Positions 630-55,972 of a stretch of DNA of 64,000 nucleotides are shown piece after piece. Both the position numbers and the translations under genes were made by a program. The notes under the pieces are model-generated. The model worked only from the letters and a program-made list of their open reading frames with translations. It searched no databases and was not told the origin of the DNA. Position 1 is the stretch's first letter. The number at the start of each line of letters is the position of its first letter. The stretch is from Sphyrna mokarran (Eukaryota), in the NCBI GenBank assembly GCA_024679065.1, contig JAGIQG010000023.1:10106001-10170000 (forward strand). Direction: 5' to 3'.

Positions 630-718
630 TCTGGTTTATGTTGTACTCGGGAGACTGGGGGCCAATCTTGTGGCGTTTGCTATTTCTCTACTTTTGTACC
701 GGAGGCGAATTGACAAGG
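630..718 (+). CDS. Gene 0 transmembrane exon of an inhibitory-type Ig-superfamily receptor (5' exons lie upstream of the window)
   Basis: Acceptor ttttctgtgtcacag|630 and donor AAGG|gtgagt. 89 nt, phase 2 to 1. Encodes (S)LVYVVLGRLGANLVAFAISLLLYRRRIDK, a hydrophobic helix followed by a basic stop-transfer cluster. Confidence 0.85.
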
Positions 719-2398: not shown

Positions 2399-2451
2399 AT
2401 ACAAATGACATAAGCCATGGAAGAGACAACGATAATCTTAATGACAATCAG
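2399..2451 (+). CDS. Gene 0 short cytoplasmic exon
   Basis: catttttcag|AT...AATCAG|gtgagg. 53 nt, phase 1 to 0, exactly bridging the TM exon and the terminal exon. Encodes DTNDISHGRDNDNLNDNQ. Confidence 0.8.
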
Positions 2452-4668: not shown

Positions 4669-4944
4669 CAAATGGCAGTTGTGGAAGAGAACAGTCTGTA
4701 TGTCAGTGTAAAGTGCAATCGAGGGAACTCAGCAGAAACACACGGCAGGCAAACTGTCCACTTCACTAACAATGAGGAAGGAGTCACATATGCAGCAGTG
4801 CAGACTCAAAAGCCTGAAGAGTTAAGAGGTCGAGGCACTCAGTTAACAATGAGGATGTGTCAAGATTCAATGATAGCCCCTAAAGAACAGCACACAAGTT
4901 TTGATGAATGTGAAATGGCAATATATAGTAACATAACTCATTAG
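4669..4944 (+). CDS. Gene 0 terminal cytoplasmic exon with ITIM motifs
   Basis: ttttctatcttgcag|CAA, phase 0. Contains SLYVSV and VTYAAV (both match ITIM S/I/V/LxYxxI/V/L) and a C-terminal AIYSNI, then TAG. Confidence 0.88.
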   Translation, partial: QMAVVEENSLYVSVKCNRGNSAETHGRQTVHFTNNEEGVTYAAVQTQKPEELRGRGTQLTMRMCQDSMIAPKEQHTSFDECEMAIYSNITH

Positions 4945-7020: not shown

Positions 7021-7093
7021 TGCAGGGGGGTCTGCGGGTGATCCTCCTCCCCACCGGAGGACAAATCCATCCTCTTGGAGTGGACATGTGTCC

Positions 7094-35094: not shown

Positions 35095-35404
35095 GTACAG
35101 TATTCTCGTTACTGATGTTTCCATTAGCATTGCGTTCCAATCAAAATCAATGATTATCAGTTTTGGCATGAGGGCTTACAATAATTTATCTGAATAGAAA
35201 TGCTAGCTATGTTTACATTGTGCTGTTATCCTGGCTTCCAAACAAGTTCTGTTTCTGTCATTGGAAATTCTTTACCTGCTTAGCAGAAAGAAATTAATAT
35301 TTTGGTTTGCCAACTTTCATATTGTACAACTTTCATTCTTCATGTTAGTCATTTCACCATGAACCCAATCTCATGGAACTGTGCCTGTCACACTCCAGCG
35401 ATGA

Positions 35405-35535
35405 TATAGAGATGCTGGCGTTGGATTGGGGTGAACACAGTAAGAAGTCTGACAACACCAGGTTTAAGTCCAACCGACTTATTTAATAATAAACTCACAC
35501 AAGCTTTCGAGGTTCTGCTCTTCATCAGGTGAATC
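35405..35535 (+). mobile_element. Short Penelope-like terminal fragment specific to the gene B copy
   Basis: aagaagtctgacaacaccaggtttaagtccaac matches the 19.3-kb element. Flanked by duplicated cactccagcgat/cactccagtgat and absent at the paralogous ~16440. Confidence 0.55.
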
Positions 35536-36188
35536 ACTCCAGTGATGCCAGATTTCCTTAACCCTGTGTATTCTGGAGTATCGCTGATAGGAACATTGCA
35601 CTCACTGTCATCTTCTCCTTCTCAGTTGCCTGATTTAATACATTGTTCCCAAACTGAGCAGTTAAAGGCTGTCTGCTTCCTGCTGATTTCAAATTTCCTG
35701 TTAGGAGGTGCACCAGGGAATTGTGGAATGTTAAAAACAGAAAGTTCTGGAAAAAACTCAGCAAGTCTGGCAGCATCTGTGGAGAGAAGAGCAGAGTTAA
35801 CATTGAGTGGAATATGATTCTACTTTGGAACAGTGTGGGATGATATTATTGGAAGATTTTTACTCACCAAACAGATATCTCACCATTGTTATATTGCACC
35901 AGACAATGTTGCTGTCCCAGTTACCAGTCAATTCATAACATTTTTACTTCTAAGATTTTACTCAGCATTACAGATATACAGAGGAAATTTAATGAAAGCA
36001 GCTCCATTTGATCTTATCTAATGATCATGAAGTTAATCAGTGAAACTCTAGTTGATTGCTCCAGTTAACGTGCCTTGTCTGTGCGGGGCTGCTACAATAA
36101 GTCAGAGTGTAAAGAGAAGATTAATGTTTCAAGCATGAAGTTGCCTCATTCCATTCAAATCATTCTGTATTTCTTCCAGTTTGCTCAG

Positions 36189-36279
36189 TTTCATTATCTG
36201 GAATGTGATTCGCTGGGGGCTGTTTACCCTTTTGGTGATTTGTGCTATTTCGGTCACATGGTACACGAGAAAATCTCAG
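36189..36279 (+). CDS. Gene B TM exon with intramembrane Arg (activating type)
   Basis: ttgctcag|T...TCTCAG|gtgagg. 91 nt, phase 2 to 0. Encodes (S)FIIWNVIRWGLFTLLVICAISVTWYTRKSQ. Confidence 0.88.
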
Positions 36280-38147
36280 GTGAGGATTACCGACTTTACA
36301 ACAATTATTCTGAGCACCTTGTGACTATCACAGATATTGTGTAGAGAAAATTGCATTGATGTCAATGTCCACAGGATTAAACACAAAATTTTACCTTTCA
36401 TTTCCAAGTGTGGTAGGGGCAGGAAAAGAGGTGATGAAGAAATATGGCTAAGAGCTATGTGTATAAATGTTGAAGGGACAGGACGCTGCTCATCCCACCA
36501 GAAATTTAGATTTTTAAAGGTTAGAAACATATTTCTAAAGGTCACTCTGATGCACAAAAGTTAAAATGGACGCCCCCCCTCCTCTCGTTGCACAACCCAA
36601 TGCAGCCCCCCTCCCCGTCCCCCAATACTACCTTTAACACTGACCCCTGCCACTGCATGGATCCTGTACCAGCACTGACCCCTGGTGCTGCATGGACACT
36701 GCCATTGGCACTGACCCCTGACAATGCATGGACACTGCCCTTGGCCCCTGGCATTGCATAGACACTATCACTTGTATCCACTCCTGGCACTACACTGATA
36801 CTGTCCCAGCACTGATCCCTGGTGCTGCATGGACACTGCCGCTGGCACTGATCCCTGGCACTAAATGAACATTGACACTGACCTCTGGCACTGAATGGAC
36901 ATTGCCCCAGCACTGACCCTTGGTGATGAGTCTGGAGTCACATGGAGGTCAGACTGCATAAGGAAAATAAATATCCTTCCCTGAAGGGCATTAGTGAGGA
37001 TTTATGACAATTTATGACTATTTATCACCATCTCCAACCAACTAGTTGGATTTCTACAACAATTGATGACAAGCTTCCTGGTCACCATTGGTCAGATTTT
37101 CAATTCCAGATTGAATTTGAATTCATTGTATTATATCCCACCAGCTGAAGTCATGTTAAAGTCATGTTCCCAGCATTTTATTATCAGCGTTTGGATTATT
37201 AGCCCAGTTACTTTGACACTAAACCAGCATCTCTGCAATATCAATACGTCAAAATGATACAGTGAATAATGGAGTAAATTATTTGCAGATGTTGCACAAA
37301 TTTGCTGCATTTCCTCACACTTGGAGATTGATGGCATAGGTGATTGACATTTTTATGGGATTCAATATGGTAGGTACAGAGAAACTCTTTGCCCAGTGGG
37401 GAGATGGAGTACATGGAACCATAACCTAAAAGTGAGGGCTTAGATACTTAGGAGTGAAATTAGGAAGCATTATTTTCATACAACTAGTCATGGAAATCTG
37501 GAATTGATCATCCTAAAATCTGTTGATGCAGGGCCTATTTGATTTCTCACAGCTGGGATTCAATAAGACAGGGACCCAGCTTCAATTTTGTCCTTGGGTG
37601 ACTGTGTAGTGTTGCAGGTTGGTGCAAGAGGCTTGAGGAGCTGAATGAGTTGTTTTTGTTGCTGTATTCCTGTGTAACCCATTCATGAAAAAAAATTCCA
37701 TTTTAACATCCAAACTTATTAAACAGTCAACAAAAGAGAAAGGAAGAAAATTGGAAAGGTTATAAAAAGGCAACAGTGATCACTGTGTGTAGGCCAGAAC
37801 TGGAGGAGATTTCAAATTATGCAGAGAGCAGTAAGAGGCTGAGACACCGACCCAGCACCAACTGGACTGTATAAAATATTTCAGAAATATGGATGTAACA
37901 ATCCATTTCTCCAATCAACTGTCCTTAATTACAGCTGCAGGGGAGCATGTTTTTTTGTGGATAAATAATGTTATACGTGTTCATGAAAATTACAAACGAG
38001 TGTTCCCAGCGAACACGCAATGGGTGATCAATGCGATCTCGAAACTGCCCCAAATTGTTGCTATTTCCTGAATTCTGTTCAAGACTGAAATGTCAATTGA
38101 TGCATTGTTCTCCCTGTCTCAATGAATTTGATGATTTTCTTTTCCAG

Positions 38148-38177
38148 TCATTCAATGAATCCAAATTTCACAGTTAA
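38148..38177 (+). CDS. Gene B probable terminal exon (short tail SFNESKFHS*)
   Basis: Strong acceptor gattttcttttccag, phase 0, conserved in gene A (~19844). Alternative acceptors or read-through would also give a short tail. Confidence 0.5.
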   Translation, partial: SFNESKFHS

Positions 38178-40328
38178 ACCAAAACTGGGAAAATGAAGAT
38201 TCCGGAATTTCATCTACATTGAAGGAATTTTGCATCCTAGTCAAATATTCAATCCCCGTCCAGCTTTGAACAATTCTTTTCACAAAACTGCATAATAGAA
38301 TATATTTTCATCATTAAATGAAGCCTGAATGGCGTGCTTGTTAGGGTGCATTGGTCATGCTGAATTCTCGCTCTGTGAACACGAACTGGCGCCAGAGTGT
38401 GGCGACTGGGGGATTTTCACAGTAACTTCATTGCAATTATTAAGGAAACAATATCAGGGTCTTTGGAAAGTTATAATGATCAGATTGGATTAATGAAATG
38501 GAAATTATGTCTGACAAATTTACTAGAGTTCTTTGAAGAGATATCAGCCAGGGTAGATAGAGGAGAACCAGTCAATGTTGTACATTTGGATTTTCAAAAG
38601 GCGTTTGATAAGGTACCATACAAAAAGTTGATATGCAAGAGGGTGTTGTTGCAAATATTCTGGTATGAATCGAAGATTGGCTAATGTGACAATTCTGTGA
38701 CTTTAAAGAACGTATTTGTCAGGTTTCTTACAAGGATTTGTTTGAGCAGATTTTTCTTTGTAATATATGCTGGCTTGTCCAGCAGGCATATGTTGTTACT
38801 ACAGCAGCATAATTGCTCCTAACTATTAGGATGTTTGTGTTAATCTGGACTACTGCTTTTCTGTTTGATTTTCAGTGGCTCCCCTGGACTTTGGCAGAAT
38901 AGGGCTTATTAGGTTGAGTGACAAGTGCAGTCATATCACTGGGTGGAGCTAGGTTTACACAGAAAAATCAAGTTAACCCCTGCTTTGAGTTTTAGAGAGT
39001 AGTGTCTCTCAGTTTCTCTCTCTGAAATTGGAGACTGGAATTTGCCAGGAAGCAAGTCTCTTTGTCTGAGAAAGTGATGATTTGGAAGCTAAAGGGTGAG
39101 ATATCCATTTCCAATTCTGAAGTCTGAAGACTAGGAGTTGCCACAGGCTAGGCTTACTTCTCTGAAGTTCTGCTATTTGGAATATATCCTTCTCTAAAAA
39201 TGTTGTCATGATGTTTGTCTAGAGGTATTAAAAGGTTGGACACAAAGGGTCCATGAAGCATGTTTGCTTTCTTTGCTAAATGTTTCTCAAGAAGGGATTT
39301 ATATCTCACTGGGGGATGTACTAAATTGGAACATCAGTGATAGCTAGCTTGTAAGAATTTTACTTTGTTATGTTTAAGTATTTTAATTGGTAAAAGTTAC
39401 GCTAATTCTTTTTTTAATACTTTATCTGTTTCTTAAACAAGTTTCCTTATAGGTCACTTGAATCATAGCTGGAGTAAAATCTAATTCAAAAATCAAATCT
39501 AAAAGTTTGGGTCTAGACTACTTTTATGAAATACCTTGGAGTGCCTGGTCTGATCCTTAATAGAGAATATGATGGGGTGGATGCTGAGAGACACTACAAC
39601 TCACAGATACTATTTAAATATAAGGTTTCTCCCATTGAAGACAGAGATGGGAAGATTTATTTTCTCTCAGAGGGTTGTGAATTTTTGGAACTCTCTTTCC
39701 CAGAGGGTGCTTGAGGCAGGATCAATAAATATTTTTCAAATAAAACTTGGAAGATTCTAGACTAGCAAGGAAATCAAAGATTATGAGGGTCAGTGAGACA
39801 TAAAGTTGAGATCACAATCAGATCAACCATGATATTATCAAGTGCCAGATTAGGCATGAGGGGCTGTGTTTGTATACAGTGACTTTGCTTCACAAAAAGC
39901 TCTTTAATGAGTTTCAGTGTATATCTGTCCAGGTATAAATTTAAAGAGTATTATTCTATATCGCACATGACATACTGTTGTGATACCTTTCACGTACCCT
40001 TCACTCACATGTATGAACTCATTGAGTGGTTCCCAATATCACATAACCTCAATAATAAAATCTCATCCTCTATTCAAATTTTTCCATGGTCTTGTCAGTC
40101 CCTATCTTTACAAATGTTTCTGCAAATCTTGTTGTTCCCTCAACTCTGGCTTCTCATGTATTTCCAATTCTTCATCACATCGCAAACAATAATGTTTCCA
40201 ATTGTCTAGATTCCAAAGTCCAGCAACCTCTCCCAAAAACTGACCAGTCTCTTTGATCTAATCTTTGCCTCAGCAACAACACTTGTCTGATGACATTATT
40301 GTAATATGCCTGAGGAGCTTTTACTAGA

Positions 40329-40625
40329 CAGCATGGTGGCACAGTGGTTAGCACTGCTGCCTCAGAGTGCCAGGGACTCAGAGTTCAGGTCTGACTGTCA
40401 GTTCACACATTCTCCTCTCCATGTTTGCATGCGTTTCTTCCGGGTGCTCCCATTTCATCCCACAATTCAAAGATGTGAGGGTTAGATTAATGGTCCATGC
40501 TAAGTTGCCCCATAAGGTTAGGGGTTAGCAGGGTAAATATATGAGGTTATGAGATAGGGATGGGTGGCAAGATATAGACTTGATGGACCGAATGGCCTCT
40601 ATCTGCACTGCGGGATTCTATAATG
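40329..40625 (+). mobile_element. HE1-like tRNA-derived SINE
   Basis: cagcatggtggcacagtggttagcactgctgcctca head and gcactgcgggattcta tail. Confidence 0.8.
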
Positions 40626-43419
40626 AAATGTATTTTATTAGGAGCAAGTTATTGCTGCTGTTGTTGATTTCACAAATGAGTTAATAATAAAAAATAAACA
40701 TGTTTCTCCAACCAAGGCTGTGATCAATGAGAGTTCTAACTTTAGATTCACTCAGAGTGAAGTTCTTACCCATGTGTAATGGATTGTACTCAGAGTTCTG
40801 AATTTTCCAGTTGGTTTCAACATTTGATAATTTTTTATTGAATGTAGAATTCTGTGAGTGATGACTCCAACCTAAATAAGCACCAATTTACAGCAATATT
40901 CCATTAACTCCTCAAATTCTTTAATGGTTGATGAGAAAGGCAAAGAGAGAGATTGACATTGGAAATAAATGTGGGTTCATGTTTGCTGCATCTTGCAATG
41001 TTCATGGTTTGAAACTGCAAGAAAAATTTGTTGCTGTCCTCAGGGTGGGGTGAGATAGAAACCCTATGAATGTACAATAGCTGTCAGATACCAAATACAG
41101 AGCTGTGTTTGCAGCAGTGAGAAGATCAGCATTGATATGGAATTTATTACAGGAAAACAGCAGGGGGGGTTTTGCTGCATTTCTTGCTGTACAAGACAGT
41201 GGCAGACCTCCATCTTGTCAAGCGAAATTAGTAATGGCGAAACATACTGTTTGAGCCAGGAATACTCATTTCCCATGAAAACTAAACAACAATAAAACAA
41301 GTTTTTAAGTTCCTGAACAAATTTTAAAATCTCCAGTAATGGGTAGGTCACATAGTAGGACAACTAGGATTTCCCTCTCTGTATGCCAGTGTTGGAGGAC
41401 AGGGCTAGTTGGCATCCTCTGCCCATTGAGCACTGCACAAGTGAAAGGGACCACCTCTGCTTCAAGACTCTTTTCCCCCTGTAAATTGTAGCTACCATCC
41501 TCCCTGATGCTAGCACTGACTCACTGGCGAGTCCTCCCCATTCAGCTCCTGTTTGGACCTTCATCGTTAGCTCGTTCCAAGACTGACTGCAATCCCTGCA
41601 GTGACCATTGCTCGTGATGGCGCTGCCGAGACTGAAGTGCTGCCAACCCCCTGATTAGCCAGCAAGTCTCCTGTCCCTGCCGAAACAGCGCCACAGTGGA
41701 CAAGGCAAGAACTGCAGCCAGAGGCCCTACACCAAGGGCAGGAACCGGAGGAAAAGGTCAGAGGTCCCAGGTCCGGCAGCAGAAGGAAGCCATGATGGGT
41801 TGTGAGCAGGGTCCAGAGAGGACGCTGGGATCAATGGGGTAGAAGGAGCGATGTCTAGTGGACCCCAGGTGACCCATTTATGAGGGTGAAGATAGAGGCT
41901 CTAGTCAGAGGGAACTTCTGATTGTGGTGCACATCCAATTCCCAACTTAGATCAAACTTGGATGATTTCCAGCTTTTATCAACAAAGTTCATAAGAATCT
42001 CAAACTAAAACAACTTGTATCCGTTTGGAAAAAAAAATTCTCCATTGACAATGAGTAAAACTATGCGCACTTAGGAACAATAGCAAAAATTTAAATAGTA
42101 TTACATGAGATATACTATACAGAAACAGGCCATTCAATCTGTCTTTTTTTTATAATCCGCAGGAGCCCACTCTTACTCCACCTGTAGCTTATCTTTCTCA
42201 TAGAATCCTGATAGTGCAGAAGGATCCTGGGATTAGTATTTATAATTCTGCTTCCTCATTCTAATGAGGAGATTGCTATGAAGCTCCAGGAGGAAACCTA
42301 TGCAGACACAGGGAGAACATGCAGTCCTCACACAGACAGTGACACAAGCTGGGAATTGAATCCAGGGTCCCTGGTGCTGGGAGGTAGCAGTGCTAACCAC
42401 TGTGCTGCTGTACATCCTCATTTTTCTGTTCCCTTTTCTCTGACAAAATCACCTACTTCACTCTTAAAAGCATCAAAACTATTTGCCTCAGTCTCTCGTG
42501 GTAGAAATCTCCACAGTCTATCATCACTCTCCGAGTCATGTTATTGCTTCTTATTCCCCTGTTGGATACATTGGTAACTATCTTGTGTTAATCATCTGTC
42601 AAAAATGGGAGTATTTTCTTTGCAAGTGCCCAATCTAACGTATTCAGAATTTTAAAGACCCCTGTCATGTCTCTACTAAATCTTCCCTTTTCTAATGAAA
42701 ACTACCTGCCTGTCTAATCGTCCCTGTGACTGCACCATTCCCATTCTAAAACATCCTTGTAAATCCTTTTTGTACTTTATCCAGCATCTGTTTGTCATTT
42801 TTATAGTCCAGGTACCACTTGTGCAAGGTGCTATAAGTACAGTCTAACTAGGGTTGTCCAAAATTTGGCTACTTTTGAATTTGATCCCACTAGAATTAAA
42901 TCTCAATGCTTTGTCAATATTTTAATTTTTTTGCTGACCAGTTATTTGGCTTCTAATTACTTGTTAACCTGTCCCTCTAGATTTTCTTGCCCTTCTAACT
43001 CATTTCAGAAGCTTATTTTCTAAGGTAGAGATTGTTTATTATTTCAAAGTGCATCATCTTGCATTTATCTGGAGGAAAGTTTCTTTGTTACTTACCGACC
43101 CAGTCTGCAACTTTTCTAATCGATTTCTGTATGATGTTATAATCTGCCTAAGTGACAGCCATACACTCAATTTTGACATAACTTGCACATTTTCACAGGG
43201 TTACTTATTCCCAAGTCTTATTATTTATATACATCATACTTAGCAGTGTTTTCCGTCCTGATTATTGTAGAACATCACTTTTTATCTTCTTCCAATCTGA
43301 ACAACTATTCTTTTCTCATCCCCCCCTCCTCTGATATTTATTTTTTTCACCAATTTTCAGCTACTAGTTGAAAGACAGTGACGTTGTGCTATTGTCCCTG
43401 GGCTAGTAATCCAGGGACC

Positions 43420-45180
43420 CTTATCCTAAAAACACGATCCCTGGTTCTGGATTCCCTTACCAATGAGAACATTCTTTCCTAATCTACCCTGTCTCACTCT
43501 GTTAGGATTTTATAAGCTTCAATGAGATTACCTCTCTCTCTTCTAAACTCCAATGAATATAATCCTAATGGATATAACCTCCCATCATCTGACAGGAATT
43601 AGTCTGGTCAACCTTTGTTGTATCTCTTTATCACATGTGCATCCTTCTTTCGATAAGGAAACCAGCACTGCACACAATGCTCCAGGTGTGGCCTCACTTA
43701 CACCATACACAAATGCAGCAAATCATTCACATTCCTATATTCAAATCCTTTCACTCTGAAGGCCAATATACCATTTATCTTCTTTACTCCCTGCCGTACC
43801 TGCGCACTCACTTTCAGTGACTGATGCACGAGGACACCAAGGTAGTGCTGAGTATTCACCTCTCTCAATTTACACCCATTTGAATAATAATCTGCCTTCC
43901 TGTTATAATCCAGCTCAGAAGTTTCAAGGTATTTTGTGAAGTTGGCTTGGACAATAAGTTTTGCATTTGAATTTGGCTAGGGTAAGCATGACATGTTTCA
44001 ATTCAAATCTGATTCAAATAACTCCCTAGGGACCTTTTATCAAACAAAGTTTATTTAAGAATACAGTTAATACATAAAAAAAGCAATAACTTTTACCTAT
44101 TACAAACAAAAAGAAAACAATCATAATATTATATCAATCTTAACAATTAAATGCACTATTCCAATTTAAGAAAACTCATTCAAAGCATAGACTGCCACAG
44201 GTTTACACAGAAAATGAGAATGCTCACTTGATGCTGGAATTTAGTCCTATGGTTAGATTGCGTAATTTTCTTGACGTAGCATGGACAAGCTTGAAGCTAA
44301 AATATCTTCTCAAAACACCAGGGAGAGGGAAAGAGAAAATAAAACAATAAAAGCAGCAATAAAAGCACTTCTAAGCAAGCAGCTGATGCCACAACAAAAA
44401 CGAGAGGCCAGCTTGCAAACTGCAGAGAACATGATTTTTTTAAGAAAACATTTCTTAAAGGTACAATAGTGTCACATTTTTATTATTGCTACTAAAGTGG
44501 ATAACCTTACATTTATCGACATTATACTGCATCTGCCATGTCTATCTAATTGCGCTGAAGTATCTCTGCATCGTCCTCACAATTTACCCTCCCACTCAAC
44601 TTTGAATCACTTGCACACTTCGAGATAATACACTTAGTACACTCTTCCAAATCGTTAATATATAGCATGAATAGTTGGGATTCTCACACAGACCCGTACA
44701 GTATCTTGCTAATCATTGCCTGCCAATTGGAAAAAAAACATCCATTTATGCCAACTGTTTGCTTCTGATCTGCTAACCAGCTTTCTATCCATCACAATAT
44801 ACTACGTTCAAACCCATATGCCCTAACTTTACATAGTAGTCAGCCATATGAGACCTCATCAAAACTCTTCTGAAAGTCCAAATAAACTACATCTACCAGT
44901 TCTCCATTGTCAACTCTAGTAGTTCCTCCTCAAAGAATTCCAATGTATTCATCAGGTATGATTTCCACTTTGTCTAATTATACCATTGTCTTCCAAATGC
45001 TGAGAAATGAAATGGACTCTGATAACTTTCCCAGCACTGACATTAGGCTCAGTGGACTATAGTTTGCTGCTTTCTCTCTACCTCCCTTTTTGAGGCTTGC
45101 ATTAGCTACCCTCTAATCTGTAGAAACAAGTCCAGAGTCCAACTAGTTTTGGGAAACGTCCACCAGTGGATCTATTATTT
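43420..45180 (-). mobile_element. Degenerate antisense CR1 LINE with an LTR-like insert at 43901-44476
   Basis: CR1 RT-like sequence (ctctgaaagtccaaataaac, aaagtggataacc) continues across the insert. Confidence 0.65.
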
Positions 45181-45386
45181 CCAGGGAATCAGGACCAGGA
45201 GCTCACTGTTAACTGATTAAGTATGACAATAAACCAAATTGGCAGCAGCAATAAAACTCGTGGGAACTACTCAGAGAGTACAGGCGAATTGACAAAATAA
45301 GTTTGTGGACAGTTCATCACAGATAAAATTTAATTAAAAAGTAAGAAAGAATAATATTCATCACATGCTCTTCATCAATACTTTTC

Positions 45387-45661
45387 CTAATGAGATACGT
45401 TAGCATATATTGCCATTTTAGACTCATCAAAGTTTGTGTGTTTTCTTTGGGGGCTATCATTGAACCTTGACTCATCCTTGTGATTAACCCAGTGCCTCGA
45501 CCTGTTAACTCCTCAAGCTTTTGAACCTGCAGTGCTGCATTTGTGACTCCTTCCTCATTGTTAATGAAATGGACAGTTTGCTTGCCGTGTGTTTCTGCTG
45601 AGTTCCCTCGATTACGCTTTACATTGGCAGACACAATGTTGTCTTCTACAACTGCCAATTG
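45387..45661 (-). pseudogene. Decayed ITIM exon of gene C (inverted paralog of 4669-4944)
   Basis: Acceptor retained. ITIM Tyr codons read TCT (IVSANV) and AAT (VTNAAL). 275 nt versus 276 nt: a 1-nt deletion near 45441-45444 shifts the third motif (AIYANV) out of frame. Confidence 0.85.
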
Positions 45662-47224
45662 CTGCAATATAGAAAATAAAGATCCAGTTTATTTCCATTT
45701 AACTTGAATGGTGATTTGTGGAGAAATCGATTTCTAGATTATTGCAAATGACATTAGTGAACCAAATAGGTTTTTATTGCAATCGACAATAGTTTTATGA
45801 TCATCATTAGATCCTTAATTCCAGACTTTTATTGAGTTCTGCCTTGGTGGGATTTGAACCCAAGTCCCCAGAAGATGATTCTGCATCTCTAGATTACTAA
45901 TCCAATACCATTTCATCAGTACCTGTTATTAATGACGGTCCACTATTTATGATCACTGTTTTTGGTCTTGCCTGCAAGTGGAAATATCTTTGTTATCTCT
46001 ACCTGAATCTTGAAGATCTCAACCAGACCATTAATTAGACAAATCCAGCTTGCTGAATCTAACCTTCAATTTTTAATTTTCCAAGGCAGAATGAGAAAAG
46101 GAGTTTTGCTGCCATTCTGCGAAATTGTACCTCGCATCCTCAGCAGACCAGATGAAGCTTTCAGGATTTTAAATCAGCCTTTATTCACCCTGTTGTAAGG
46201 GAGTTTGCATCCCAGAAGGTGGCATACTGACACAGAGTACGCAGTATTATAACTTTGCATATGTTATATGTAATTCTCATACACCAATCACAAGTATACA
46301 TTCGTTCAGAAATCATTAATATCCAATTACAGACAATAGATCTGACTACATCATTTATGTCAGGTGAATATAATTAACCAGGTATACCCTCTGTATTTAA
46401 AGTTGGTTATGGTCCAGTCACGAGGCCCCTGAAGGATTGTGCAATAAAGGGGCAATGGGACCATACCAAGTCGATATTCTCTGCTGTTCAGCAGGATGTG
46501 AAATGATCTCATTGAAAATTTTTTAAAAATCTTAATTGAATTCATAGGGCAGATATGAGAAAATGTTTCCTCTGACTGGAGAATCTACAAGACAGAGTTC
46601 ATAAGACCACAAGAGCATATGATATAGGAGCAGAATTAGACTATTCAGCTAATTGAGTCTGCTCCACCATTCAATCATAGCTGATTAGTTTCTCAACCCC
46701 ATTCTCCCACCTTTTCCCAAAAATCTATGATCCCTTCACCACACATTAATCTATCTATCTCTGCCTTAAATCTGTCACAGTCCTCGAGCACAGTTTGGGC
46801 CCATTTACTGAGATTGGATGAGGATACAGAAGGTTCTGTATCTTTGGAATTCTCTGTTGCAGAGAGCTGTGAATGCTTCACCATTGAGTACATTCAAATT
46901 AGACATCAATAGATTTTTGGGAGTTTGAGGAACTAGGCTGTCATACTGAAAGATCACTACAAGATTTCTCTCACACAGCTAACCAAAGAAATGACTTGGG
47001 GCGGAACTTTCCCAGTCTGTCCTCATTGCGAATTGTAGCAGGCGAGACAGCGAATTTGGTGGACCATTTTAAAGGTCCGTTGACCTGGGATGGGAACTTC
47101 TAATCTTGGAGTGTACTTAACCAAACAAATCTCGATCTTGGACTTACCTAAATCTACATGATCCTATTGAATGGCAGGGAGACTCGATGGGCTGAATGGC
47201 CCACTCATGTTCCTGTGGTCTTGT

Positions 47225-48635
47225 AGAACATAGAACATTACAGCGCAGAACAGGCCCTTCGGCCTTCGATGTTGCGCCGACCAATTATGAAAAAAGCAAT
47301 GACCCTCCAAACTAAACCATTCCCTTCTCTTCCATAAACTTATCAACTAACCTCTTAAACGCACCAAACTTGGCGCATCTACAACTGCCGCAGGCAGGGC
47401 ATTCCACTCCCTAACCACCCTCTGGGTAAAGAACCTACGTCTGATATCCGTCCTATAACTATCACCCCTTACTTTAAAGCTGTGTCCCCTCGTGCTAGCT
47501 TTCTCCATCCTAGGAAAAAGGCTATCACTGTCCACCCTATCTAAACCTCTAATCATCTTATATGTTTCGATAAGGTCCCCTCTTAGCCGCCTCCTTTCTA
47601 ACGAAAACAACCTCAAATCCCTCAGCCTCTCTTCATAAGACCTGCCCTCCATACCAGGCAACATCCTGGTAAACCTCCTCTGTACCCTCTCCAATGCCTC
47701 CACATCTTTCTTATAATGTGGGGACCAGAACTGCACACAATACTCCAAGTGCGGCCGCACTAGAGTTTTGTACAGTTGCAACATGACGTTGCGGCTCCGA
47801 AATTCAATCCCCCTACCAATAAAAGCTAAGACTCCATATGCCTTCTTAACAACCTTATCGACTTGACTGCCTACTTTCAGGGATCTATGCACAAATACAC
47901 CAAGATCCCTCTGTTCATCAACACTATTAAGAATCCTACCATTAGCCCTATACTCTACACATTTATTATTCCTGCCATAGTGCATTACCTCACACTTTTC
48001 CACATTAAACTCCATTTGCCACCTCTCGGCCCAGCTCTGCAACTTGTCCAAGTCTCTCTGCAAACTATAACACCCCTCTTCACTATCTACCACTCCACCG
48101 ACTTTAGTGTCATCTGCAAATTTACTAATCCATCCTTCAATACCCTCATCCAGATCATTTATAAAAATTACAAACAGCAGGGGCCCAAAACAGATCCCTG
48201 AGGTACACCACTTGTAACCGAACTCCACGATGAATATCTCCCATCAACCACCACCCTCTGTCTTCTATCTGCTAGCCAATTCCTAATCCAATTAGCTAAA
48301 TCACCCTCAATCCCATACATCTGCATTTTCTGCAGAAGCCTTCCATGGGCCACCTTATCGAACGCCTTACTAAAGTCCATATATACCACATCAACTGCCT
48401 TACCCCCATCCACCTCTTTGGTCACTTTTTCAAAAAACTCAATAAGGTTAGTAAGGCACGACCTACCCTTCACAAAACCATGCTGACTATCCCCAATCAA
48501 TTCATTTCTCTCTAAATAACTATAAATCCTATCCCTAATAATTCTCTCCAATACTTTGCCCACAACAGAAGTGAGACTCACTGGCCTATAATTCCCTGGA
48601 AAGTCTCTCTTCCCCTTCTTGAACAATGGGACCAC
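47225..48635 (-). mobile_element. Young 5'-truncated CR1 LINE (RT domain)
   Basis: PGNYRPVSLTSVVGK...SQHGFVKGRSCLTNL...YMDFSKAFDKV...GVPQGSVLGP...ISKFADDTK, with one frameshift at ~48190 and an (agaacat)n tail. Absent from the paralogous gene 0 intron (~965). Confidence 0.95.
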
Positions 48636-48869
48636 AGTCTTATGGTTTCTATCATTCTAAATCTGTGTTGAGTTTCACTTGCTCCAGAGTTTACAGGGTT
48701 ATTTGTTGTTTTCAAACAACAGTAACAACTTCAACATTTTCCATGTTTAGTACAAGTACATTAGAAGGTGCAGGATCCCAAAATCAGAAATGCTTGTTGA
48801 TTGCAGCATATTAGTCTTTAGAAAATGATTGTAACATAACAAAATGATTCTGGGGAAAAAGAAATTCAT

Positions 48870-48892
48870 CCTTGTCGATTTGCCTCTGATAC
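48870..48892 (-). pseudogene. Remnant of the gene C TM exon (last ~23 nt only, donor GT>AT)
   Basis: Reverse strand gtatcagaggcaaatcgacaagg|ATgaatttc aligns to gene 0 gtaccggaggcgaattgacaagg|GTgagtttc, and the following intron is homologous. The upstream hydrophobic part is replaced by LINE-like sequence. Confidence 0.8.
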
Positions 48893-50658
48893 TTGACCAG
48901 TCCATTGATATCATTTTGCAGCCGATAGCAATCTTTCTCGCTATCTACCGCATGAGTAATTTTCATGTTGATACTCTCTACTTTACGCCTAAATCATTAA
49001 TATATGCCACAAAATGCAGGGGACCTCCCGCTGAGCATTGGAACAAATCCAGTCACAGACGTCAACAATCATCTTTTGTTTCCAGCCACAATTGATTCTT
49101 GACCATTTGTTTACGGAAGTGGGTTTTGAAATTATATAGCGCTCTTCATGACCTTTGAATGGTCTAAAGAGCTTTACAATCTAGGAAGTACTTTTAAACA
49201 AACACCACCACTGCTGTTATATGGGAGATTGGCAACCAATTTGCACACAGCAAAATCTCAAATAGCAGTGAACTTTGACCAGATCAATATTGGCCATTTC
49301 TCTAGTGCTCTCCTTGTCTGCTTTTTCTATAGATAAGAAGTGACCTGCCGTGTATTTCCAGCAGCTTTTTCATCATGTTGATGTTTAGTTGATATTTTTT
49401 CCTCATCATCATTGTAACAATTTCTGATCTTTTTGTACATCCCAACTATGTTAGGGGTTGTGGGTTTTAACAGAAAAGGAAAAGACTTAGTTTGCACGCG
49501 TAGATTCAAACAAACACAAAACGCATTTTAATAAAGAGCTGCTCTCTGCACTGCATGAAGTATAAAAGTGTCAGTAACACAGCAGCCTGAACATGCACCC
49601 TAATGACATCACATCAAATCAACCCTTTTTAAAGCTCGCATCTTCATTATGAAGTGAACACAACAGCTTCTCGCCAAGGTTCCTGATCTGAAAGTATTGA
49701 AAAATGATGCCCAGTATCCCAGATCATCAGAGACTGGATGTATGACCCAAAATGTGTGTCAGAACCCTGCAGATGACCCAACATGATGACCTCCATGGGA
49801 ATTACTTGGGACATTGGAATTTCCAATGGACAATTCTGCTGTTTCCTGGGTCCGTCTGTGAAAATCTGTAGCTTTGGGTAAGAGCTTCAAACAATTATTG
49901 CATAATTATCCAGGAAATATTAGACTGAAAGAATCAAGTTTAATTTCTGAGTAGACACAGAACTAACTCCTGAATAATCACATTGATGCCCGATCTCCCC
50001 CAATCTTCTGATGAATTCCCTGACATATCATTTATCACCCCACATCTCTGACTATCCCATCTGACCTTGTACCTAAGCCACAAGCTGAGCCAATCCGATA
50101 TTCTCTCTGACTATCCTTGAATACCCAATGTCCAAATCTGATTAGCCCCTCAGGCCAAGCTACCCCTGTCAACCTGACATAATTACCACACTATTCATCT
50201 ACCATCTCATCAACCTACTACAACTTCATCCACTTGCTTCCCTACACATATACCACTTCACCTATCTGCACCCATTTTACATACTTATGACCTCACTCAT
50301 CTGTCTTCTCATCCACTTATCACCCTTGCCTCCAATTACCAACACATCTATACACTTGTCTCCCTATCCAGCTTACACTCTACCCACCTGTGGTCCTACA
50401 GAGTCCCAGTGGAGTTCTCTAAGGGACACTGCATTCCACAGATTTGGCGAATCTGGACTCAGAATATCAGACAAGAAATGCGGAGCTGAGTCGAGGATGG
50501 AAAGCTTCGAGTGGAATGGCAATCCAACAATGATTGCTGCTCTGTGACTGACCCAGGACAATAAATGATATCCATCCTTGTGCCTAAATTATTCAACAGG
50601 ATTTAATCCCTCAGACAGAAGTCATGTCATTTAAACACTAACAATAAAAACAACATAC

Positions 50659-50737
50659 CTTTTAGCAAGTTAGGAGTTTGGAGTTGAGGAATGTGTTGGC
50701 GATACTGTTAAAGCTTCACAAGAATTTTCAGGTCCAA
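50659..50737 (-). CDS. Gene C stalk exon with in-frame stop (CDS ends at 50670)
   Basis: ttttcttgtttcag|TT...AAAAG|gtatgt. 79 nt, phase 1 to 2 like the A/B stalks. Encodes VGPENSCEALTVSPTHSSTPNS*LAK, with TAA at 50672-50670. Confidence 0.8.
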
Positions 50738-52105
50738 CTGAAACAAGAAAATAATATACAGATCAGCCTCATTTTCATTGTCTTTAACTGAGAGAGCCAC
50801 ATTGTCAAGTGGCGCCTTGACCTAAGGGAGAACCTCATTGAGGAAGCACCTCATCTTGGGATGTGGGTGTCAGTGTTTAGCCCAGCAATTATTGCCCATC
50901 CATAATTGCCCTTGAGACGATGGTCATGAGATGCCTCTTAAACCACTGCAGTCCTTGTGGTGTAGGTACATCTACAGTGCTGTGAGGGAGAGAGCACCCA
51001 TCGCACCTGTGACACTCAAAACCAAACCACCTGACTATTCTAATCCCATTTTTCAACACATGGTCCATAGCTTTGTGTGCCTTGGCATCACGAGTGCACA
51101 TCTAAATAATTCTTAAATGTTATGAGGGTCTGGAAGGCACAAGTGAAATTTGCCTATTCCTCCTGGAAGAGGACTAGGCAAACATTTACATTTATCTCAA
51201 AGGACGTGTAGGTCAGCAGTTCAACCAGACAATAGCACTGTCAACAGCAGAGCACAATCTCCGTGCTATACAGGGATATCAACACCTTTCTCGGAAGGAG
51301 AATTTGAACTCACAACCCATTGGTTTCAGAAATCAGGCTGCTACCATCTGAGCCCCTTCTGACACTGACATATTAAACATTCAAACAGGTTAAAGTCCTC
51401 GTTAATTCTGAACTATAGTTAGCGTTTATGTTAAATTACTGAGTAATTTAATGTTTAGAACATGGAATTCTGAGAGTTTGAGCAGCATTTTGTGATGATA
51501 GAATTTTACGGCAAAGAAGGAAATTTGGTCCATTGCCCTCCATCGCTATGAAAGAATTTGCCATTCAGAATCATAGAATCCATGCAGTGCCCAAGGAGGC
51601 CATTTAGCCCATGGAGTCGACAGCGACACTCCCATTATTATGTCTTTTCCCCAAATCCTCCTAAATATCTGCTCCTTTTTTGCTTCCCCTTGTAAAAGCT
51701 ATTATTCATGCTGGTTCTAATGCAATCTATACCTTAATAATCATTTGCATCAATAAAATTCTCTCAATTTCTCCCGCTGTCCTTGTTGTGATGATCTTAA
51801 TGTATTCTCTCAAACAGTGACGCACTTACTAGTGGAAATAATAAGTCTCAATTTAACTAATCAAAGCCTCCAATAATTTTGAATAGATCTAGCAGATCTT
51901 GTCTTTCTGTTCTAATGAGCCTCTGCTGGTGTCAGCTATTGGTATCACTCTTGTGTCTGCATCAGACATTCTATACTCAAACTCTACTCTAGGACTCAAA
52001 AATCAAAGCTGACACTCCTGTGCAGTACTGAGGAAGTGCTGCACTGTTGGGGATGCAGCCTTTTGGATGGGATGTTGAACTGAGTCCCCAGTCTGCTTGC
52101 TCTAT

Positions 52106-52434
52106 GGGCAGCATGGTGTAACAGTGGTCAGCACTGCTGCCTCACAGTGCCAGAGACACCGGGTTCAATTCTGACGTCGAGTGACTGTGTGGAGTTTGCA
52201 CATTCTCCCCGAGTCTGCATGGGTTTCCTCCAGAGGCTTCGGCTTCCTCCCATAATGCAAAGACATGCAGGTTAGATGGATTGGTGAAGCTAAATTGCCC
52301 TTTAGTGTCAGGGGAAACCAGCTAGGGTAAATGCATGGGGTTATGGGGATAAGGTCTGGATGGAATCATCGTTGGCAGAGACTCAATGCACCAAATGGTC
52401 ACCTTCTGCACTGTAGAATTCTATGGATTCTATG
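52106..52434 (+). mobile_element. HE1-like tRNA-derived SINE nested in another SINE
   Basis: gggcagcatggtgtaacagtggtcagcactgctgcctcacag, B box gggttcaattc, tail gcactgtagaattctatggattctatg. Confidence 0.8.
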
Positions 52435-53086
52435 AATCTGCGCATGTATAAGATCTGTGGCACTCGATCTCCTGAAGAAATGCAGGAGCGTTATCCCAAA
52501 TCACCCGGCAATATTTATCCTCAATCAAAAACAGGTTCTCAGTTTGCTGTGTGCAAATTGGCTGCTGTGTTCCCTGCCTCACAACAGTGGCAGTGTTTCA
52601 AAAAGCATTTCATTGCCTGTGAAGTGCTTTGAGAAGTCAGGTGACTATAAAAATAAATGTGAGACATTCTTCCATTTCGTAAGTGAGACTTTTTAAGATG
52701 CTGTCATTTTATATCAGTATTTCAAATTTCTATCCTTACCATTCATCCAAAAGCAAGAGACATCAGCTAAAGATTGTTTTTCATAATTTGATCTCCAAGA
52801 AATGGGATCAGGAATGGTAAATGGAGATTTTATCAATCAAGTTCTGTTTAATTTTAAAGGGATTACTGCAACATTTACACGTTTGGGGAATATTTTATGA
52901 TCCTAATATTTTGAATCAATATTTTTTATCAGTAACTTTGTTCTGAATGGTTGATGGACAAAGAAGAATGAATTTTGTCAGTTGCAAATCATTCAGAGAG
53001 ACATTAGGAAGCAAACCAGAAACCAGAATAGACAAATGACAATAAATATTTCACTGACCACATTTTACATTTACACCATCACTTAC

Positions 53087-53410
53087 CAACACTGTTGATC
53101 TGTGTCACATAACTGCAATTCGCCCCTGATCTGTTGAACAGTGACACTGTAACCATTTCACTGGATTTGTCTCCCTGGTTATTTGAGGCTATGCAGTAAT
53201 ATTCATGACGTTGCTGTGTGAAGGATTGACAATGTAGATCCAGTTTATTGGTGTCAGAGATCTTTGAATCTTCAGGCAGGGTCTTCTCATACCATGTATA
53301 CTGAATGGGAAGTGATCCCTGGACAGACTCACAGGAGACGGACACTGAGCCCCCAGAACATGAGGCATTTGGTGGTGATAAATATCTAAGTTCAGGAACA
53401 GATACGGGTT
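53087..53410 (-). CDS. Gene C C2-like Ig exon (last unit)
   Basis: cttttgcccacag|AA...GTTG|gtaagt. 324 nt, phase 1-1, open. Confidence 0.9.
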
Positions 53411-54686
53411 CTGTGGGCAAAAGACAACCATGAATGGATTTTCATAGTAGCTTCATTGCAGTGCTCATGTCAGCCTACTTGTGATAACAAGTAAAAAAAA
53501 ACTTTAAGTTTCAACTTCAATTGTTTAAGCTTTAGCATGACCAAAAAGTTAATTTTTTTCATATTATCAATATTTCAACACCTCATCCAGGATGTGAGGA
53601 AGAAAGGAAAGTGTTAGAGACAGAGAGAGAGAGAGATGGCAGTGGAAGCATGGCTGAATGCAGGTAGTATCTATTGATTGCTCTCATGGACAGCAGATAT
53701 TCATGATAGTAAATTAGTTAGTGACAAGCATTGGAGTGTGACCTGTGATGTTTGCTGAGATAATGCAGACATAAATATCTTATATAAAAACTAATCTTGA
53801 CCCAAATTCTCCGATATCAAACGAGGTGCCTCCATTGCCAGTTAGAGTAGGGAATTTGGCGCTCAGCCAAATCTTCATTCACAGCAGCAGGACTGGAGGA
53901 TTCCAGCTGCAGATAATGTTGCTGAACTCCAGCCATTGTTTGTATTTGTATTTAAAGTTCAACAATTAGTACCATTAACATTAAGGTGTGAATACTGTTT
54001 TAAATCTAGGGTGAGGTTTTATGGCCTCGAATGAGCGAGACTGGAAAATCCCGCCCAAAGTCAACAGACATTTCTGTTGTCGGCCCCACACCCACTCCAA
54101 TACCATAGCGGGCAAGGCAGTAAATTTTCAAAGTATCATCCAAAGGACATGAGCTGGGAGATAGAAGCTATCAGCTGGCAGCAACTGAAACAGTTAATTG
54201 AGGAAACTGGCTTGAACTGCTCTCTTTGAGCTGAGTCCCTTTGTTTTTAAACATGTAAAATCGCACATTCTCACTGCAACCAACACTGGACACTGACTTC
54301 ACCAGAGTGTGGAGGTTTAATGAGGAGAACGAATTTATTACAGGAGAAGAAATGAGCTGTTAGTGAGTATCTGGCAAGTATTCGGGACGTGGTGAAGACC
54401 AAATGTCCAGGTATTGGGAGCATGGAATGGGTCCTTACCAACTTGTTAATCAGGAAAGTGTGGTCCAAGGAGCAATAAATCTAACCTCATCTCTCTGGAT
54501 CATTACTCTGAGCCTCTGAATTACAATTCCTCCAACATAATCATTATTCTAACTGCGCTCTAGCTGCCAGAATTGGCACTCCATGGATCCTCCGGATATT
54601 GAAGCTGTCAATGTCTCCTCTCAGATAAAGCACCAATCAGACATTTCAGTTGAGAGTAATAAAGATAATCACTGAGAACAATTTAC

Positions 54687-55657: not shown

Positions 55658-55972
55658 CACTGTTGCTGAATTGTGTCACATAACTGCAATCATTCTCTGA
55701 AATGTGGATCACTGCCACTGTAACTATTTCACTGGATTTGTTTCCCTGGTTATTTGAGGCTGTGCAGTAATATTGATGATGTTGCTGTGTGAAGGATTGA
55801 CAATGTAGATCCAGTTTATTGGTGTCAGAAATCTTTGAATCATCAGATGGGGTCTTTTCATACCATGTGTACTGAATGGGAAGTGATCCCTGGACAGACT
55901 CACAGGAGATGGACACTGAGCCCCAGGCATTTGGTGGTGATAGAAATCTAAGTTCAGGAACAGATACGGGTT
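55658..55972 (-). CDS. Gene C C2-like Ig exon (9-nt in-frame deletion)
   Basis: tttccacag|AA...AGTG|gtaaat. 315 nt, open. Confidence 0.88.

What the first reader, a model, noticed from the sequence alone, without database searches (positions are those of the whole stretch)
45387..50737. One stalk stop codon followed by wholesale decay of everything downstream: a membrane-to-secreted switch caught in the act
Seen in sequence: TAA lies 11 nt before a phase-2 donor that originally matched the phase-2 TM exon. Downstream, (1) the TM exon is cut to ~23 nt, (2) its donor is GT>AT, (3) a young CR1 has inserted in the next intron, (4) about 1.6 kb including the 53-nt exon is deleted (junction near 46400, equal to ~1944-3520 of gene 0), (5) two ITIM tyrosines are single-base mutated, and (6) the third motif is frameshifted. 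Upstream Ig exons have no disabling lesion. Inference: selection was released only on the signalling half, which argues for a functional secreted ectodomain rather than a whole-gene pseudogene. A possible ATTAAA poly(A) signal lies at 50607-50602 on the minus strand.
Basis: partly seen in the sequence, partly recalled or inferred. Interest (0 to 1): 0.82.

Follow-up and report, generated by a model that had tools for sequence, protein, structure and literature searches.

The report
Shark receptor gene turned soluble
A shark immune-receptor gene stops just before its membrane anchor and the anchor and signalling parts lie decayed downstream, so it most likely now encodes a secreted protein, a kind of change already known from mammalian receptor families.

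Summary
All sequence observations hold. On the minus strand a 79-nt stalk exon (50737-50659) carries an in-frame TAA (50672-50670) 11 nt before a good phase-2 donor. Downstream lies a relic of the TM/ITIM tail that is intact in the inverted paralogue, gene 0. Only 23 nt of the TM exon remain, its donor is GT>AT, the 53-nt exon is deleted, two ITIM tyrosines are changed and the third motif is frameshifted.

New here:
- The stalk exon has open homologues in genes A and B (ACA where C has TAA).
- RNA-like contigs of one run splice the last C2 exon to it.
- The TM cut looks like one ~0.9-kb deletion starting in an old CR1 fragment.
- The nine Ig exons in the window diverge 2-4 times less than their introns and have no frameshift. 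If they had been neutral for 25% of the time since the split from gene 0, P(intact) would be about 0.001.

So constraint was lost on the tail only, which favours a germline-encoded soluble ectodomain, as with LILRA3 or LAIR2.

Not supported: that the TAA came first, that the switch is recent, that the intronic CR1 is a lesion, or that ATTAAA at 50607 is used. Whether gene C's own TAA-bearing mRNA is expressed remains unproven.

The parts
53087..53410 (-). last C2-type Ig exon of gene C (phase 1-1), spliced to the stalk exon
   Evidence: open frame and AG/GT sites; Ig_3/Ig_2 hits just under Pfam cut-offs; PDB best hit FCRL5 at E 1.4e-37; joint 53087->50737 in X1 contigs
50659..50737 (-). stalk exon, 79 nt, phase 1 in and phase 2 out; reads GPENSCEALTVSPTHSSTPNS*LAK
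   Evidence: diverged open homologues in gene B (34974-35130) and gene A (16050-16187), score 77 and 70 against a shuffle maximum of 42; GT..AG joint to the C2 exon
50670..50672 (-). in-frame TAA, 11 nt before the donor; the aligned codon is ACA in genes A and B
   Evidence: no difference listed here, but coverage of these three letters is not shown directly
50657..50658 (-). donor GT of the stalk exon (AAAAG|gtatgt)
50602..50607 (-).
   Evidence: present; the depth of bin 50501-50700 (18.2) is too low for read-through at exon depth
48898..49025 (-). old CR1 reverse-transcriptase fragment that abuts the TM remnant; upstream edge of the inferred ~0.9-kb deletion
   Evidence: tblastx to young-CR1 positions 475-621, while gene 0 63-585 matches CR1 positions 868-1432
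48870..48892 (-). remnant of the TM exon: the last 23 nt (YQRQIDK); the hydrophobic span and the acceptor are gone
48869..48869 (-). former donor G changed to A (GT>AT)
47212..48636 (-). 5'-truncated CR1 insertion in the sense orientation, absent from gene 0; long open RT frames with one frame break
   Evidence: very high contig depth and a 1-letter insertion variant at 48183
46397..46402 (-). junction of the ~1.6-kb deletion that removed the 53-nt cytoplasmic exon (gene 0 1934-3521)
45387..45661 (-). relic of the last (ITIM) exon; acceptor intact; Y>S at 45631-45629, Y>N at 45541-45539, 1-nt deletion at 45442/3; the third motif's TAT at 45407-45405 is out of frame
45329..45334 (-). ATTAAA shared with the gene 0 3' UTR (candidate ancestral poly(A) signal)
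   Evidence: 60-nt windows around it are among the most conserved of the tail alignment
630..718 (+). gene 0 TM exon (reference copy), phase 2 in and phase 1 out
2399..2451 (+). gene 0 53-nt cytoplasmic exon, needed to keep the ITIM frame
   Evidence: splice sites and phases read from the sequence
4669..4944 (+). gene 0 last exon with SLYVSV, VTYAAV and AIYSNI

Best explanation
Gene C is an inverted duplicate of a giant inhibitory poly-Ig receptor of the gene 0 type: pIgR/CD300-type V domains alternating with FCRL-like C2 domains, then a stalk, a TM span and a tail with ITIM-like motifs. In gene C the reading frame ends at a TAA in the stalk exon, and the hydrophobic part of the TM exon is physically gone. 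The only product it can make is an anchorless ectodomain ending ...SCEALTVSPTHSSTPNS. Purifying selection went on acting on the Ig exons while the TM and cytoplasmic exons drifted. Gene C is therefore most likely a germline-encoded soluble receptor, a possible decoy or opsonin-like partner of the membrane form, and not a dead gene.

Shown: the lesions, the homology and splicing of the stalk exon, and the asymmetry of constraint.

Inferred: secretion (the signal peptide lies outside the window), present-day expression of this very copy, the order of events, and any decoy function.
For: - The lesions are exactly as described.
- The stalk exon is homologous to the open stalk exons of genes A and B, with the same AAAG|GTA phase-2 end.
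- TM exons of gene 0 and gene B start in phase 2.
- Joints 50737->53087 with GT..AG ends on the minus strand occur in 2 contigs. Two further variants of the same junction occur in 3 contigs of run X1.
- The two stalk differences seen in X1 are both synonymous: 50700, and 50736 by my reading of the letters.
- 9 of 9 Ig exons in the window are open with intact splice sites.
- Exon divergence is 0.03-0.14 against intron divergence 0.22-0.32. There are 0 frameshifts in exons against 6-14 per kb in introns. dN/dS is 0.16-0.93, mostly about 0.4.
- The tail exon differs from gene 0 at 39 of 275 sites, with dN/dS 0.93, equal to the noncoding divergence K = 0.173.
- P(Ig exons intact) is 0.0013 at 25% neutral time.
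- Gene A shows what a whole-gene pseudogene looks like here.
- No other TM-like exon lies downstream of the stalk.
Against: - Only one run was found. It is labelled RNA by guess, kept as short contigs, and 94-97% like the window in the unique parts.
- All 9 contigs over 50700 differ from the window. Contigs on the C2 exon mostly carry residues of other units. Expression of gene C itself, and the presence of the TAA in RNA, are therefore not shown.
- The 5' part of the gene lies outside the window and could carry lesions.
- The tail's dN/dS is high even though gene 0 is intact, so it cannot date the loss.
- Much of the exon conservation between units could predate the split. The simulation addresses this but rests on rates from 1.9 kb of noncoding alignment.
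- The codon aligned to the TAA is ACA in A and B, two steps away, so a single mutation is not demonstrated.
Confidence: 0.6

Rival explanations
1. Gene C is a dead gene as a whole. It lost function only recently, or through lesions outside the window, and its Ig exons have not yet had time to decay.
For: The stop, the loss of the TM exon and the tail lesions are classic pseudogene marks. Gene A next door is a pseudogene. No contig in X1 matches the window at 50700. The 5' end was not seen.
Against: The Ig exons stay intact over a time in which the tail collected 2 large deletions, a donor loss and a frameshift. P(intact) is 0.0013 at 25% neutral time and 0.06 at 10%. Exon divergence is well below intron divergence. 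The C2|stalk junction is present in spliced contigs.
Confidence: 0.2
2. The tail relic never belonged to gene C. It is an orphan partial duplicate of the 3' half of gene 0 that landed behind a gene that was already soluble, or that ends elsewhere.
For: Homology to gene 0 is seen only from the TM exon's 67th base onwards. The 1.77 kb between the stalk and the relic has no match to the stalk-TM introns of A or B. The upstream part of gene 0 is outside the window, so continuity cannot be checked.
Against: Same strand, right order and plausible distance. The stalk donor phase (2) fits the family's TM acceptor phase. An old CR1 fragment upstream of the relic is compatible with being the 5' part of the CR1 that ends just before the gene 0 TM exon. 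Unchecked earlier notes say both genes are giant (V-C2)n arrays.
Confidence: 0.12
3. The TAA is an assembly error or a private null allele. The normal allele reads on.
For: The stop codon rests on one assembly. X1 shows a different letter nearby, at 50700.
Against: No difference is listed at 50670-50672, although coverage there is not proven. Even without the TAA there is no TM exon to read into: the acceptor and 66 nt are deleted and the donor is mutated. The membrane form is lost either way.
Confidence: 0.05

Closest known systems
LILRA3 (ILT6), the soluble member of the human LILR family
   Same: A germline gene inside a cluster of paired activating and inhibitory Ig receptors whose product lacks the TM region and the tail and is secreted (PMC8562567 passages; PMC3031540 passage).
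   Different: It has four C2 domains and belongs to the mammalian LRC. Here the gene has pIgR/CD300-type V domains alternating with FCRL-like C2 domains, at least 9 Ig exons in the window, and visible relics of an ITIM tail. How LILRA3 lost its anchor I did not read in any call.
LAIR2, the secreted paralogue of inhibitory LAIR1
   Same: A soluble duplicate of an ITIM receptor, lying in an inverted duplicated block and thought to compete for the ligand (PMC8562567 and PMC6557307 passages; reference title). Gene 0 and gene C are likewise inverted paralogues, one with an intact ITIM tail.
   Different: It has a single Ig domain and collagen as ligand. No ligand is known here and no function was tested.
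Carp SITR and related zebrafish soluble immune-type receptors
   Same: Fish proteins with a CD300-like V domain joined to a V/C2 domain, with no TM or signalling motif, encoded as soluble receptors (PMC3031540 passages).
   Different: They are two-domain teleost genes. That paper describes no relic tail in the passages I read.
MDIR (modular domain immune-type receptors) of the clearnose skate
   Same: A multigene family of cartilaginous fish with CD300/TREM/pIgR-like domains and activating and inhibitory members (PMC3031540 passages).
   Different: I saw no MDIR sequences and did not read the primary paper (not in the library). Membership was not tested.
pIgR / secretory component
   Same: The V exon's best solved relatives are pIgR chains (E 1.3e-35 to 5e-29). 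pIgR also yields a soluble poly-Ig ectodomain.
   Different: Secretory component is released by proteolysis of a membrane protein, not by a stop codon. pIgR has only V-type domains. The gene C V domains lack one Cys of the extra disulfide that gene B keeps.

Membership tests
pIgR/CD300-type V-set domain receptors | V-set Ig domain most similar to pIgR and CD300 (CMRF35-like) domains | tested here: met
   Pfam V-set at E 3.2e-11, 43.8 bits against a cut-off of 26. PDB phmmer: pIgR 1.3e-35 to 5e-29, CD300/CLM-1 about 2e-14.
pIgR/CD300-type V-set domain receptors | an extra intradomain Cys pair (KYWC...C) besides the canonical pair; this feature is recalled, not taken from a call | tested here: not met
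   All 4 of 4 gene C V exons read KYWSRQC and so lack the first Cys. Genes B and A read KYWCQGWTDLC and KYWCRSWTQQC.
ITIM-bearing inhibitory receptor | a cytoplasmic (S/I/V/L)xYxx(I/V/L) motif in frame after a TM span (consensus recalled) | tested here: not met
   Gene C has a stop before the TM span, Y>S, Y>N and a frameshifted third motif. Gene 0 meets the feature with SLYVSV and VTYAAV; its AIYSNI is non-canonical.
Germline-encoded soluble Ig receptors (LILRA3/LAIR2/SITR kind) | the open reading frame ends before any TM span and there is no alternative TM exon | tested here: met
   TAA in the stalk. The hydrophobic part of the TM exon is absent from the window. None of the 3 hydrophobic hits in the scan is a usable exon: one lies upstream of the stalk, one inside the CR1 and one beyond the tail.
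Germline-encoded soluble Ig receptors (LILRA3/LAIR2/SITR kind) | the gene is transcribed and correctly spliced | tested here: inconclusive
   The C2|stalk GT..AG joint is seen in 5 contigs of one run. The run is RNA by guess only, about 94-97% like the window, with several paralogous variants, and all 9 contigs differ at 50700.
Germline-encoded soluble Ig receptors (LILRA3/LAIR2/SITR kind) | a signal peptide and a secreted protein | not testable with these tools
   The 5' end lies beyond the window and there are no protein data.
MDIR family of cartilaginous fish | sequence relationship to the skate MDIR1-5 cDNAs | not tested
   No tool returned an MDIR sequence. The nearest named proteins were 'Fc receptor-like protein 5' of Chiloscyllium plagiosum (71%) and 'Fc receptor-like protein 2' of Mobula hypostoma (70%) for the C2 exon.

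The most novel reading that the evidence does not exclude
The 'decay' is partly constructive. With the TM acceptor and the 53-nt exon gone, the only acceptor left downstream is that of the relic ITIM exon (45661), whose acceptor region and ancestral ATTAAA (45334-45329) are among the best-kept parts of the tail. Gene C would then splice its stalk donor (50658) to the relic exon and reuse it as 3' UTR and poly(A) site. The TAA, 11 nt before what is now the last exon junction, would escape nonsense-mediated decay, whereas the same stop in an intact gene would be followed by two more distant junctions and be degraded. The deletions would thus have rescued expression of the soluble form. The 50-55-nt NMD rule is recalled knowledge.
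Probability: 0.25. Interest if true: 0.55.

Novelty: new member of a known kind. Interest (0 to 1): 0.4.

Why it matters
Paired-receptor clusters often spin off soluble members (LILRA3, LAIR2, fish SITR), but the genomic trace of how the anchor was lost is rarely this legible. Here the intact parent-type tail (gene 0), a true pseudogene (gene A), an activating member (gene B) and the truncated gene sit in one 64-kb window. Constraint on the two halves of one gene can therefore be compared against internal controls.

If the product is real, it would be a very large secreted poly-Ig protein with pIgR-like V domains in a cartilaginous fish. That is of interest for the early history of soluble immune recognition and of decoy regulation of inhibitory receptors. 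It is an extension of a known theme, not a new principle.

Tried and rejected
- **Relatives of the ITIM tail.** phmmer of the 92-aa gene 0 last exon against 1.84 billion representatives gave 2 hits with E up to 0.001. Both are repetitive proteins with no real likeness. There is thus no outgroup to polarise the tail changes.
- **Full-length annotated relatives.** The search for homologous proteins with the last C2 exon gave 4 hits among 7 candidates, all short, and none with the gene C stalk. The tool's length window excludes the giant proteins.
- **The missing 66 nt of the TM exon.** None elsewhere in the window.
- **Another TM exon.** The hydrophobicity scan of 45000-53100 (minus strand) gave 3 hits, none usable. 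I did not score splice sites around them.
- **ATTAAA at 50607 as the poly(A) signal.** Rejected as evidence. The motif is common. The depth of bin 50501-50700 fits about 31 nt of exon-level cover, not read-through (my arithmetic; weak).
- **Dating the loss by dN/dS of the tail.** Uninformative. A value of 0.93 implies that the gene 0 tail is itself weakly constrained.
- **Conservation of the relic acceptor and poly(A) region as proof of use in gene C.** It has 3-4 differences per 60 against a median of 10. One-sided constraint in gene 0 alone would give about 5, so this does not discriminate.
- **Reads.** Only one run was offered. My single read-laying run covered 47501-53500, so a joint from 50659 to 45661 could not be seen, and 199 loose ends were not shown.
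- **Earlier notes.** The search by words gave nothing.
- **Papers.** The primary MDIR paper is not in the library. Searches listed no paper on soluble CD300/pIgR-like genes of sharks. These were narrow searches and no proof of absence. Supplements were not consulted and bear on no claim here.

Full report
**Layout of the window**

Self-comparison and stop-to-stop ORFs show a cluster of Ig-receptor genes.
- **Gene 0.** Only its 3' end is in the window, on the + strand: TM exon 630-718, a 53-nt exon 2399-2451, and last exon 4669-4944.
- **Genes A and B.** Both are on the + strand, each with one V exon and one C2 exon. They are colinear from 14221-24902 and 33242-41561.
- **Gene C.** It lies on the minus strand and is built from a 2.55-kb unit repeated from 64000 down to 53083. 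Each unit holds a V exon and a C2 exon.
- **Domain types.** The V exons are V-set (Pfam E 3e-11), closest to solved pIgR chains (E 1e-35 to 5e-29) and then to CD300 (2e-14). The C2 exons are closest to FCRL5 (E 1.4e-37). Their nearest named proteins are 'Fc receptor-like' predictions of Chiloscyllium plagiosum (71%) and Mobula hypostoma (70%).
- **Earlier notes.** Unchecked notes of this scan say that gene 0 and gene C both continue outside the window as giant (V-C2)n arrays.

**The observation**

- **Stalk exon.** It runs 50737-50659 (minus), with a pyrimidine-rich acceptor and the donor AAAAG|gtatgt.
- **Frame and stop.** Entered in phase 1 from the C2 exon, it reads GPENSCEALTVSPTHSSTPNS, then TAA (50672-50670), then 11 nt. 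It leaves in phase 2.
- **Matching phase.** The TM exons of gene 0 and gene B both begin in phase 2.
- **Tail homology.** Downstream, the minus strand from 48892 to 45272 is colinear with gene 0 696-5058.
- **TM exon.** Only its last 23 nt remain, and the former donor G is A at 48869.
- **CR1.** A CR1 piece with long RT frames lies at 48636-47212.
- **Deletion.** Gene 0 1934-3521, which holds the 53-nt exon, is replaced by 6 nt at 46397-46402.
- **Relic last exon.** It spans 45661-45387. Tyr codon 11 is TCT, Tyr codon 41 is AAT, and a 1-nt deletion at 45442/3 puts the third motif out of frame.

**What I can add to the anatomy**

1. *The stalk exon is a family exon, not just a plausible ORF.*
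   - A sensitive alignment finds diverged homologues in gene B (34974-35130, score 77) and gene A (16050-16187, score 70). One hundred shuffles reach at most 42.
   - Both homologues are open, keep the Cys and end in AAAG|GTA in phase 2. The Mobula protein P0005 shows the same ..SCE.. stalk followed by a TM span.
   - The codon aligned to the TAA is ACA in both A and B. A one-step origin of the stop is therefore not shown. The informative copy, the gene 0 stalk, lies outside the window.
2. *The TM exon was probably lost in one deletion.*
   - In gene C the sequence directly upstream of the 23-nt remnant (49025-48898) is a piece of an old CR1 reverse transcriptase, matching positions 475-621 of the young copy.
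   - In gene 0 the 590 nt before the TM exon are the 3' part of such an element, positions 868-1432.
   - If both are the same ancient insertion, one deletion of roughly 0.9 kb removed the rest of the CR1, the TM acceptor and the first 66 nt of the exon. This is an inference.
   - The missing 66 nt are nowhere else in the window.
3. *The young CR1 sits in an intron.* Gene 0 has its own private insertions, so the CR1 is no sign of decay.

**Is constraint really asymmetric?**

- **Introns between units.** Between the repeat units of gene C, introns differ by JC 0.22-0.32 and carry 6-14 non-3n indels per kb. This excludes the pairs made alike by a recent duplication or conversion: u1/u2 in the C2-V intron, and u0/u1 in the V-C2 intron.
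- **Ig exons between units.** V exons differ by 0.04-0.08 and C2 exons by 0.03-0.14. The 16 exon pairs compared have no frameshift and a single 9-nt in-frame gap.
- **dN/dS of Ig exons.** It is 0.16-0.62 for V and 0.39-0.93 for C2.
- **Relic last exon.** It differs from gene 0 at 39 of 275 sites (JC about 0.16, dS 0.165, dN 0.154, ratio 0.93). That is as much as the 1,866 aligned noncoding sites around it (K = 0.173, 19 non-3n indels).
- **Simulation.** I took those noncoding rates for the gene C lineage and asked how long the 2,847 nt of Ig exons could have been neutral:

| Share of the time since the split spent neutral | P(no stop and no frameshift) |
|---|---|
| 100% or 50% | effectively 0 |
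| 25% | 0.0013 |
| 10% | 0.06 |

- **Small lesions in the tail.** The roughly 300 nt of surviving tail coding sequence carry one frameshift and one donor loss. About 2.7 small lesions are expected over the whole period.
- **Control.** Gene A has frameshifting indels in its V exon, and a lost acceptor plus TGG>TAG in its TM exon.
- **Caveats.** The rates come from a short alignment. Part of the conservation between units may predate the split. The gene's 5' part was not seen.

**RNA evidence**

- **The run.** Only one run was offered. It is called RNA by guess, held as short contigs, and shares 0.06 of the words.
- **Splice junction.** Laid on 47501-53500 at 90% or more, it gives joints 50737->53087 whose skipped part begins CT and ends AC on the + strand. 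That is GT..AG on the minus strand, exactly the predicted C2 donor and stalk acceptor. Two contigs show it at depth 15. Two further variants of the same junction are seen in 2 contigs and 1 contig.
- **What this means.** A spliced junction shows the run does hold RNA-derived sequence and that the stalk exon is used.
- **Differences in the stalk.** Two are seen: 50700, in all 9 contigs that cover it, and 50736. Both are synonymous (for 50736, my reading of the letters).
- **Limits.**
  - The unique contig 50410-50584 has 11 differences in 175.
  - The contigs on the C2 exon mostly carry residues typical of other units.
  - Three junction variants coexist.
  - The material therefore comes from a relative and/or from several paralogues, possibly including the counterpart of gene 0.
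- **The TAA.** No difference is listed at it, but the output does not show that contigs cover it away from their ends. Summed depth in bin 50501-50700 fits only about 31 nt of exon-level cover.
- **Other negatives.** The same arithmetic speaks weakly against read-through to ATTAAA 50607. There is no cover on the TM remnant (depth 0 in 48701-49100).
- **Not tested.** A joint from the stalk donor to the relic last exon could not be seen, because the stretch I chose stopped at 47501.

**Interpretation**

The best reading (0.6) is a germline-encoded soluble derivative of an inhibitory giant poly-Ig receptor.
- **Membrane form.** It is impossible on two independent grounds: the stop, and the absence of the hydrophobic span. 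An error at the TAA would therefore not restore it.
- **Order of events.** It cannot be recovered from one genome. Either the stop or the 0.9-kb deletion could have come first.
- **Timing.** The switch is not 'caught in the act': the tail has drifted for about as long as it has been separate from gene 0.
- **Rivals.** These are a recently dead whole gene (0.2), an orphan tail that never belonged to gene C (0.12), and an erroneous or private stop (0.05).

**A bolder possibility**

Probability is about 0.25.
- The relic exon's acceptor (...ttctatattgcag|) is intact.
- The 60-nt windows just upstream of it and around the shared ATTAAA (45334-45329) have 3-4 differences against a median of 10.
- If gene C splices its stalk donor to this exon, the TAA lies 11 nt before the last junction and would escape nonsense-mediated decay. 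The 50-55-nt rule is recalled knowledge.
- With the TM and 53-nt exons still in place, the same stop would have been followed by more distant junctions.
- The conservation could equally be due to constraint in gene 0 alone, so this stands as a testable idea only.

**Comparison with what is known**

- **Fish.** Carp SITR and zebrafish relatives are soluble proteins with a CD300-like V domain. The skate MDIRs are CD300/TREM/pIgR-like activating and inhibitory receptors (PMC3031540 passages).
- **Verdict.** The present case is a new member of that known kind, in an elasmobranch pIgR/CD300-V plus FCRL-like-C2 family.
- **Membership of MDIR.** It was not tested, because no MDIR sequence was available.
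- **V domains.** In gene C they fail the family's extra-Cys feature that gene B keeps.

Noticed in passing
window 10791-11218 and 16992-17334 (+): Gene A is a multi-lesion pseudogene. Its V exon has several frameshifting indels relative to gene B. Its TM exon copy has lost the acceptor AG and has TGG>TAG in the membrane span. Its stalk exon (about 16050-16187) is still open.
   Followed up: partly
window 36180-36279 (+): The gene B TM exon (phase 2 in) encodes IIWNVIRWGLFTLLVICAISVTWY, with an Arg in the span. That is the activating type.
   Followed up: partly
window 62569-60010 vs 60009-57458 (-): These two neighbouring 2.55-kb units are 96-98% alike in their introns, while all other unit pairs are 74-81% alike. 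This points to a recent unit duplication or conversion inside gene C.
   Followed up: partly
window 55915-55972 (-): The fourth C2 exon has an in-frame 9-nt gap (NA---WGS) that removes the Cys of NASCSGG present in the other four C2 exons.
   Followed up: no
window 50720-50712 (-); gene B about 35020; P0005: A Cys in the stalk (NSCE / YTCQ / YSCE) is shared by genes A, B and C and by a Mobula hypostoma protein. It could form an interchain disulfide in the secreted product.
   Followed up: no
window 52101-52300 and 47501-48500: Contig depth in run X1 is extremely high here (about 10,700 and 1,300-9,000). These are abundant or expressed repeats: a short element near 52.1-52.3 kb and the CR1 family. 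At 48183 about half the depth carries one extra letter, which is where this CR1 copy's frame breaks.
   Followed up: no
window 1-590 (+): The 3' part of an old CR1 ends about 40 nt before the gene 0 TM exon. The same element may mark the deletion edge in gene C.
   Followed up: partly
window 4721-4790 (+) / 45609-45540 (-): Inside the tail exon the stretch NRGNSAETHG.QTVHF is nearly unchanged between gene 0 and the relic (3 differences in 60 columns). No relatives of it were found in 1.84 billion representatives.
   Followed up: no
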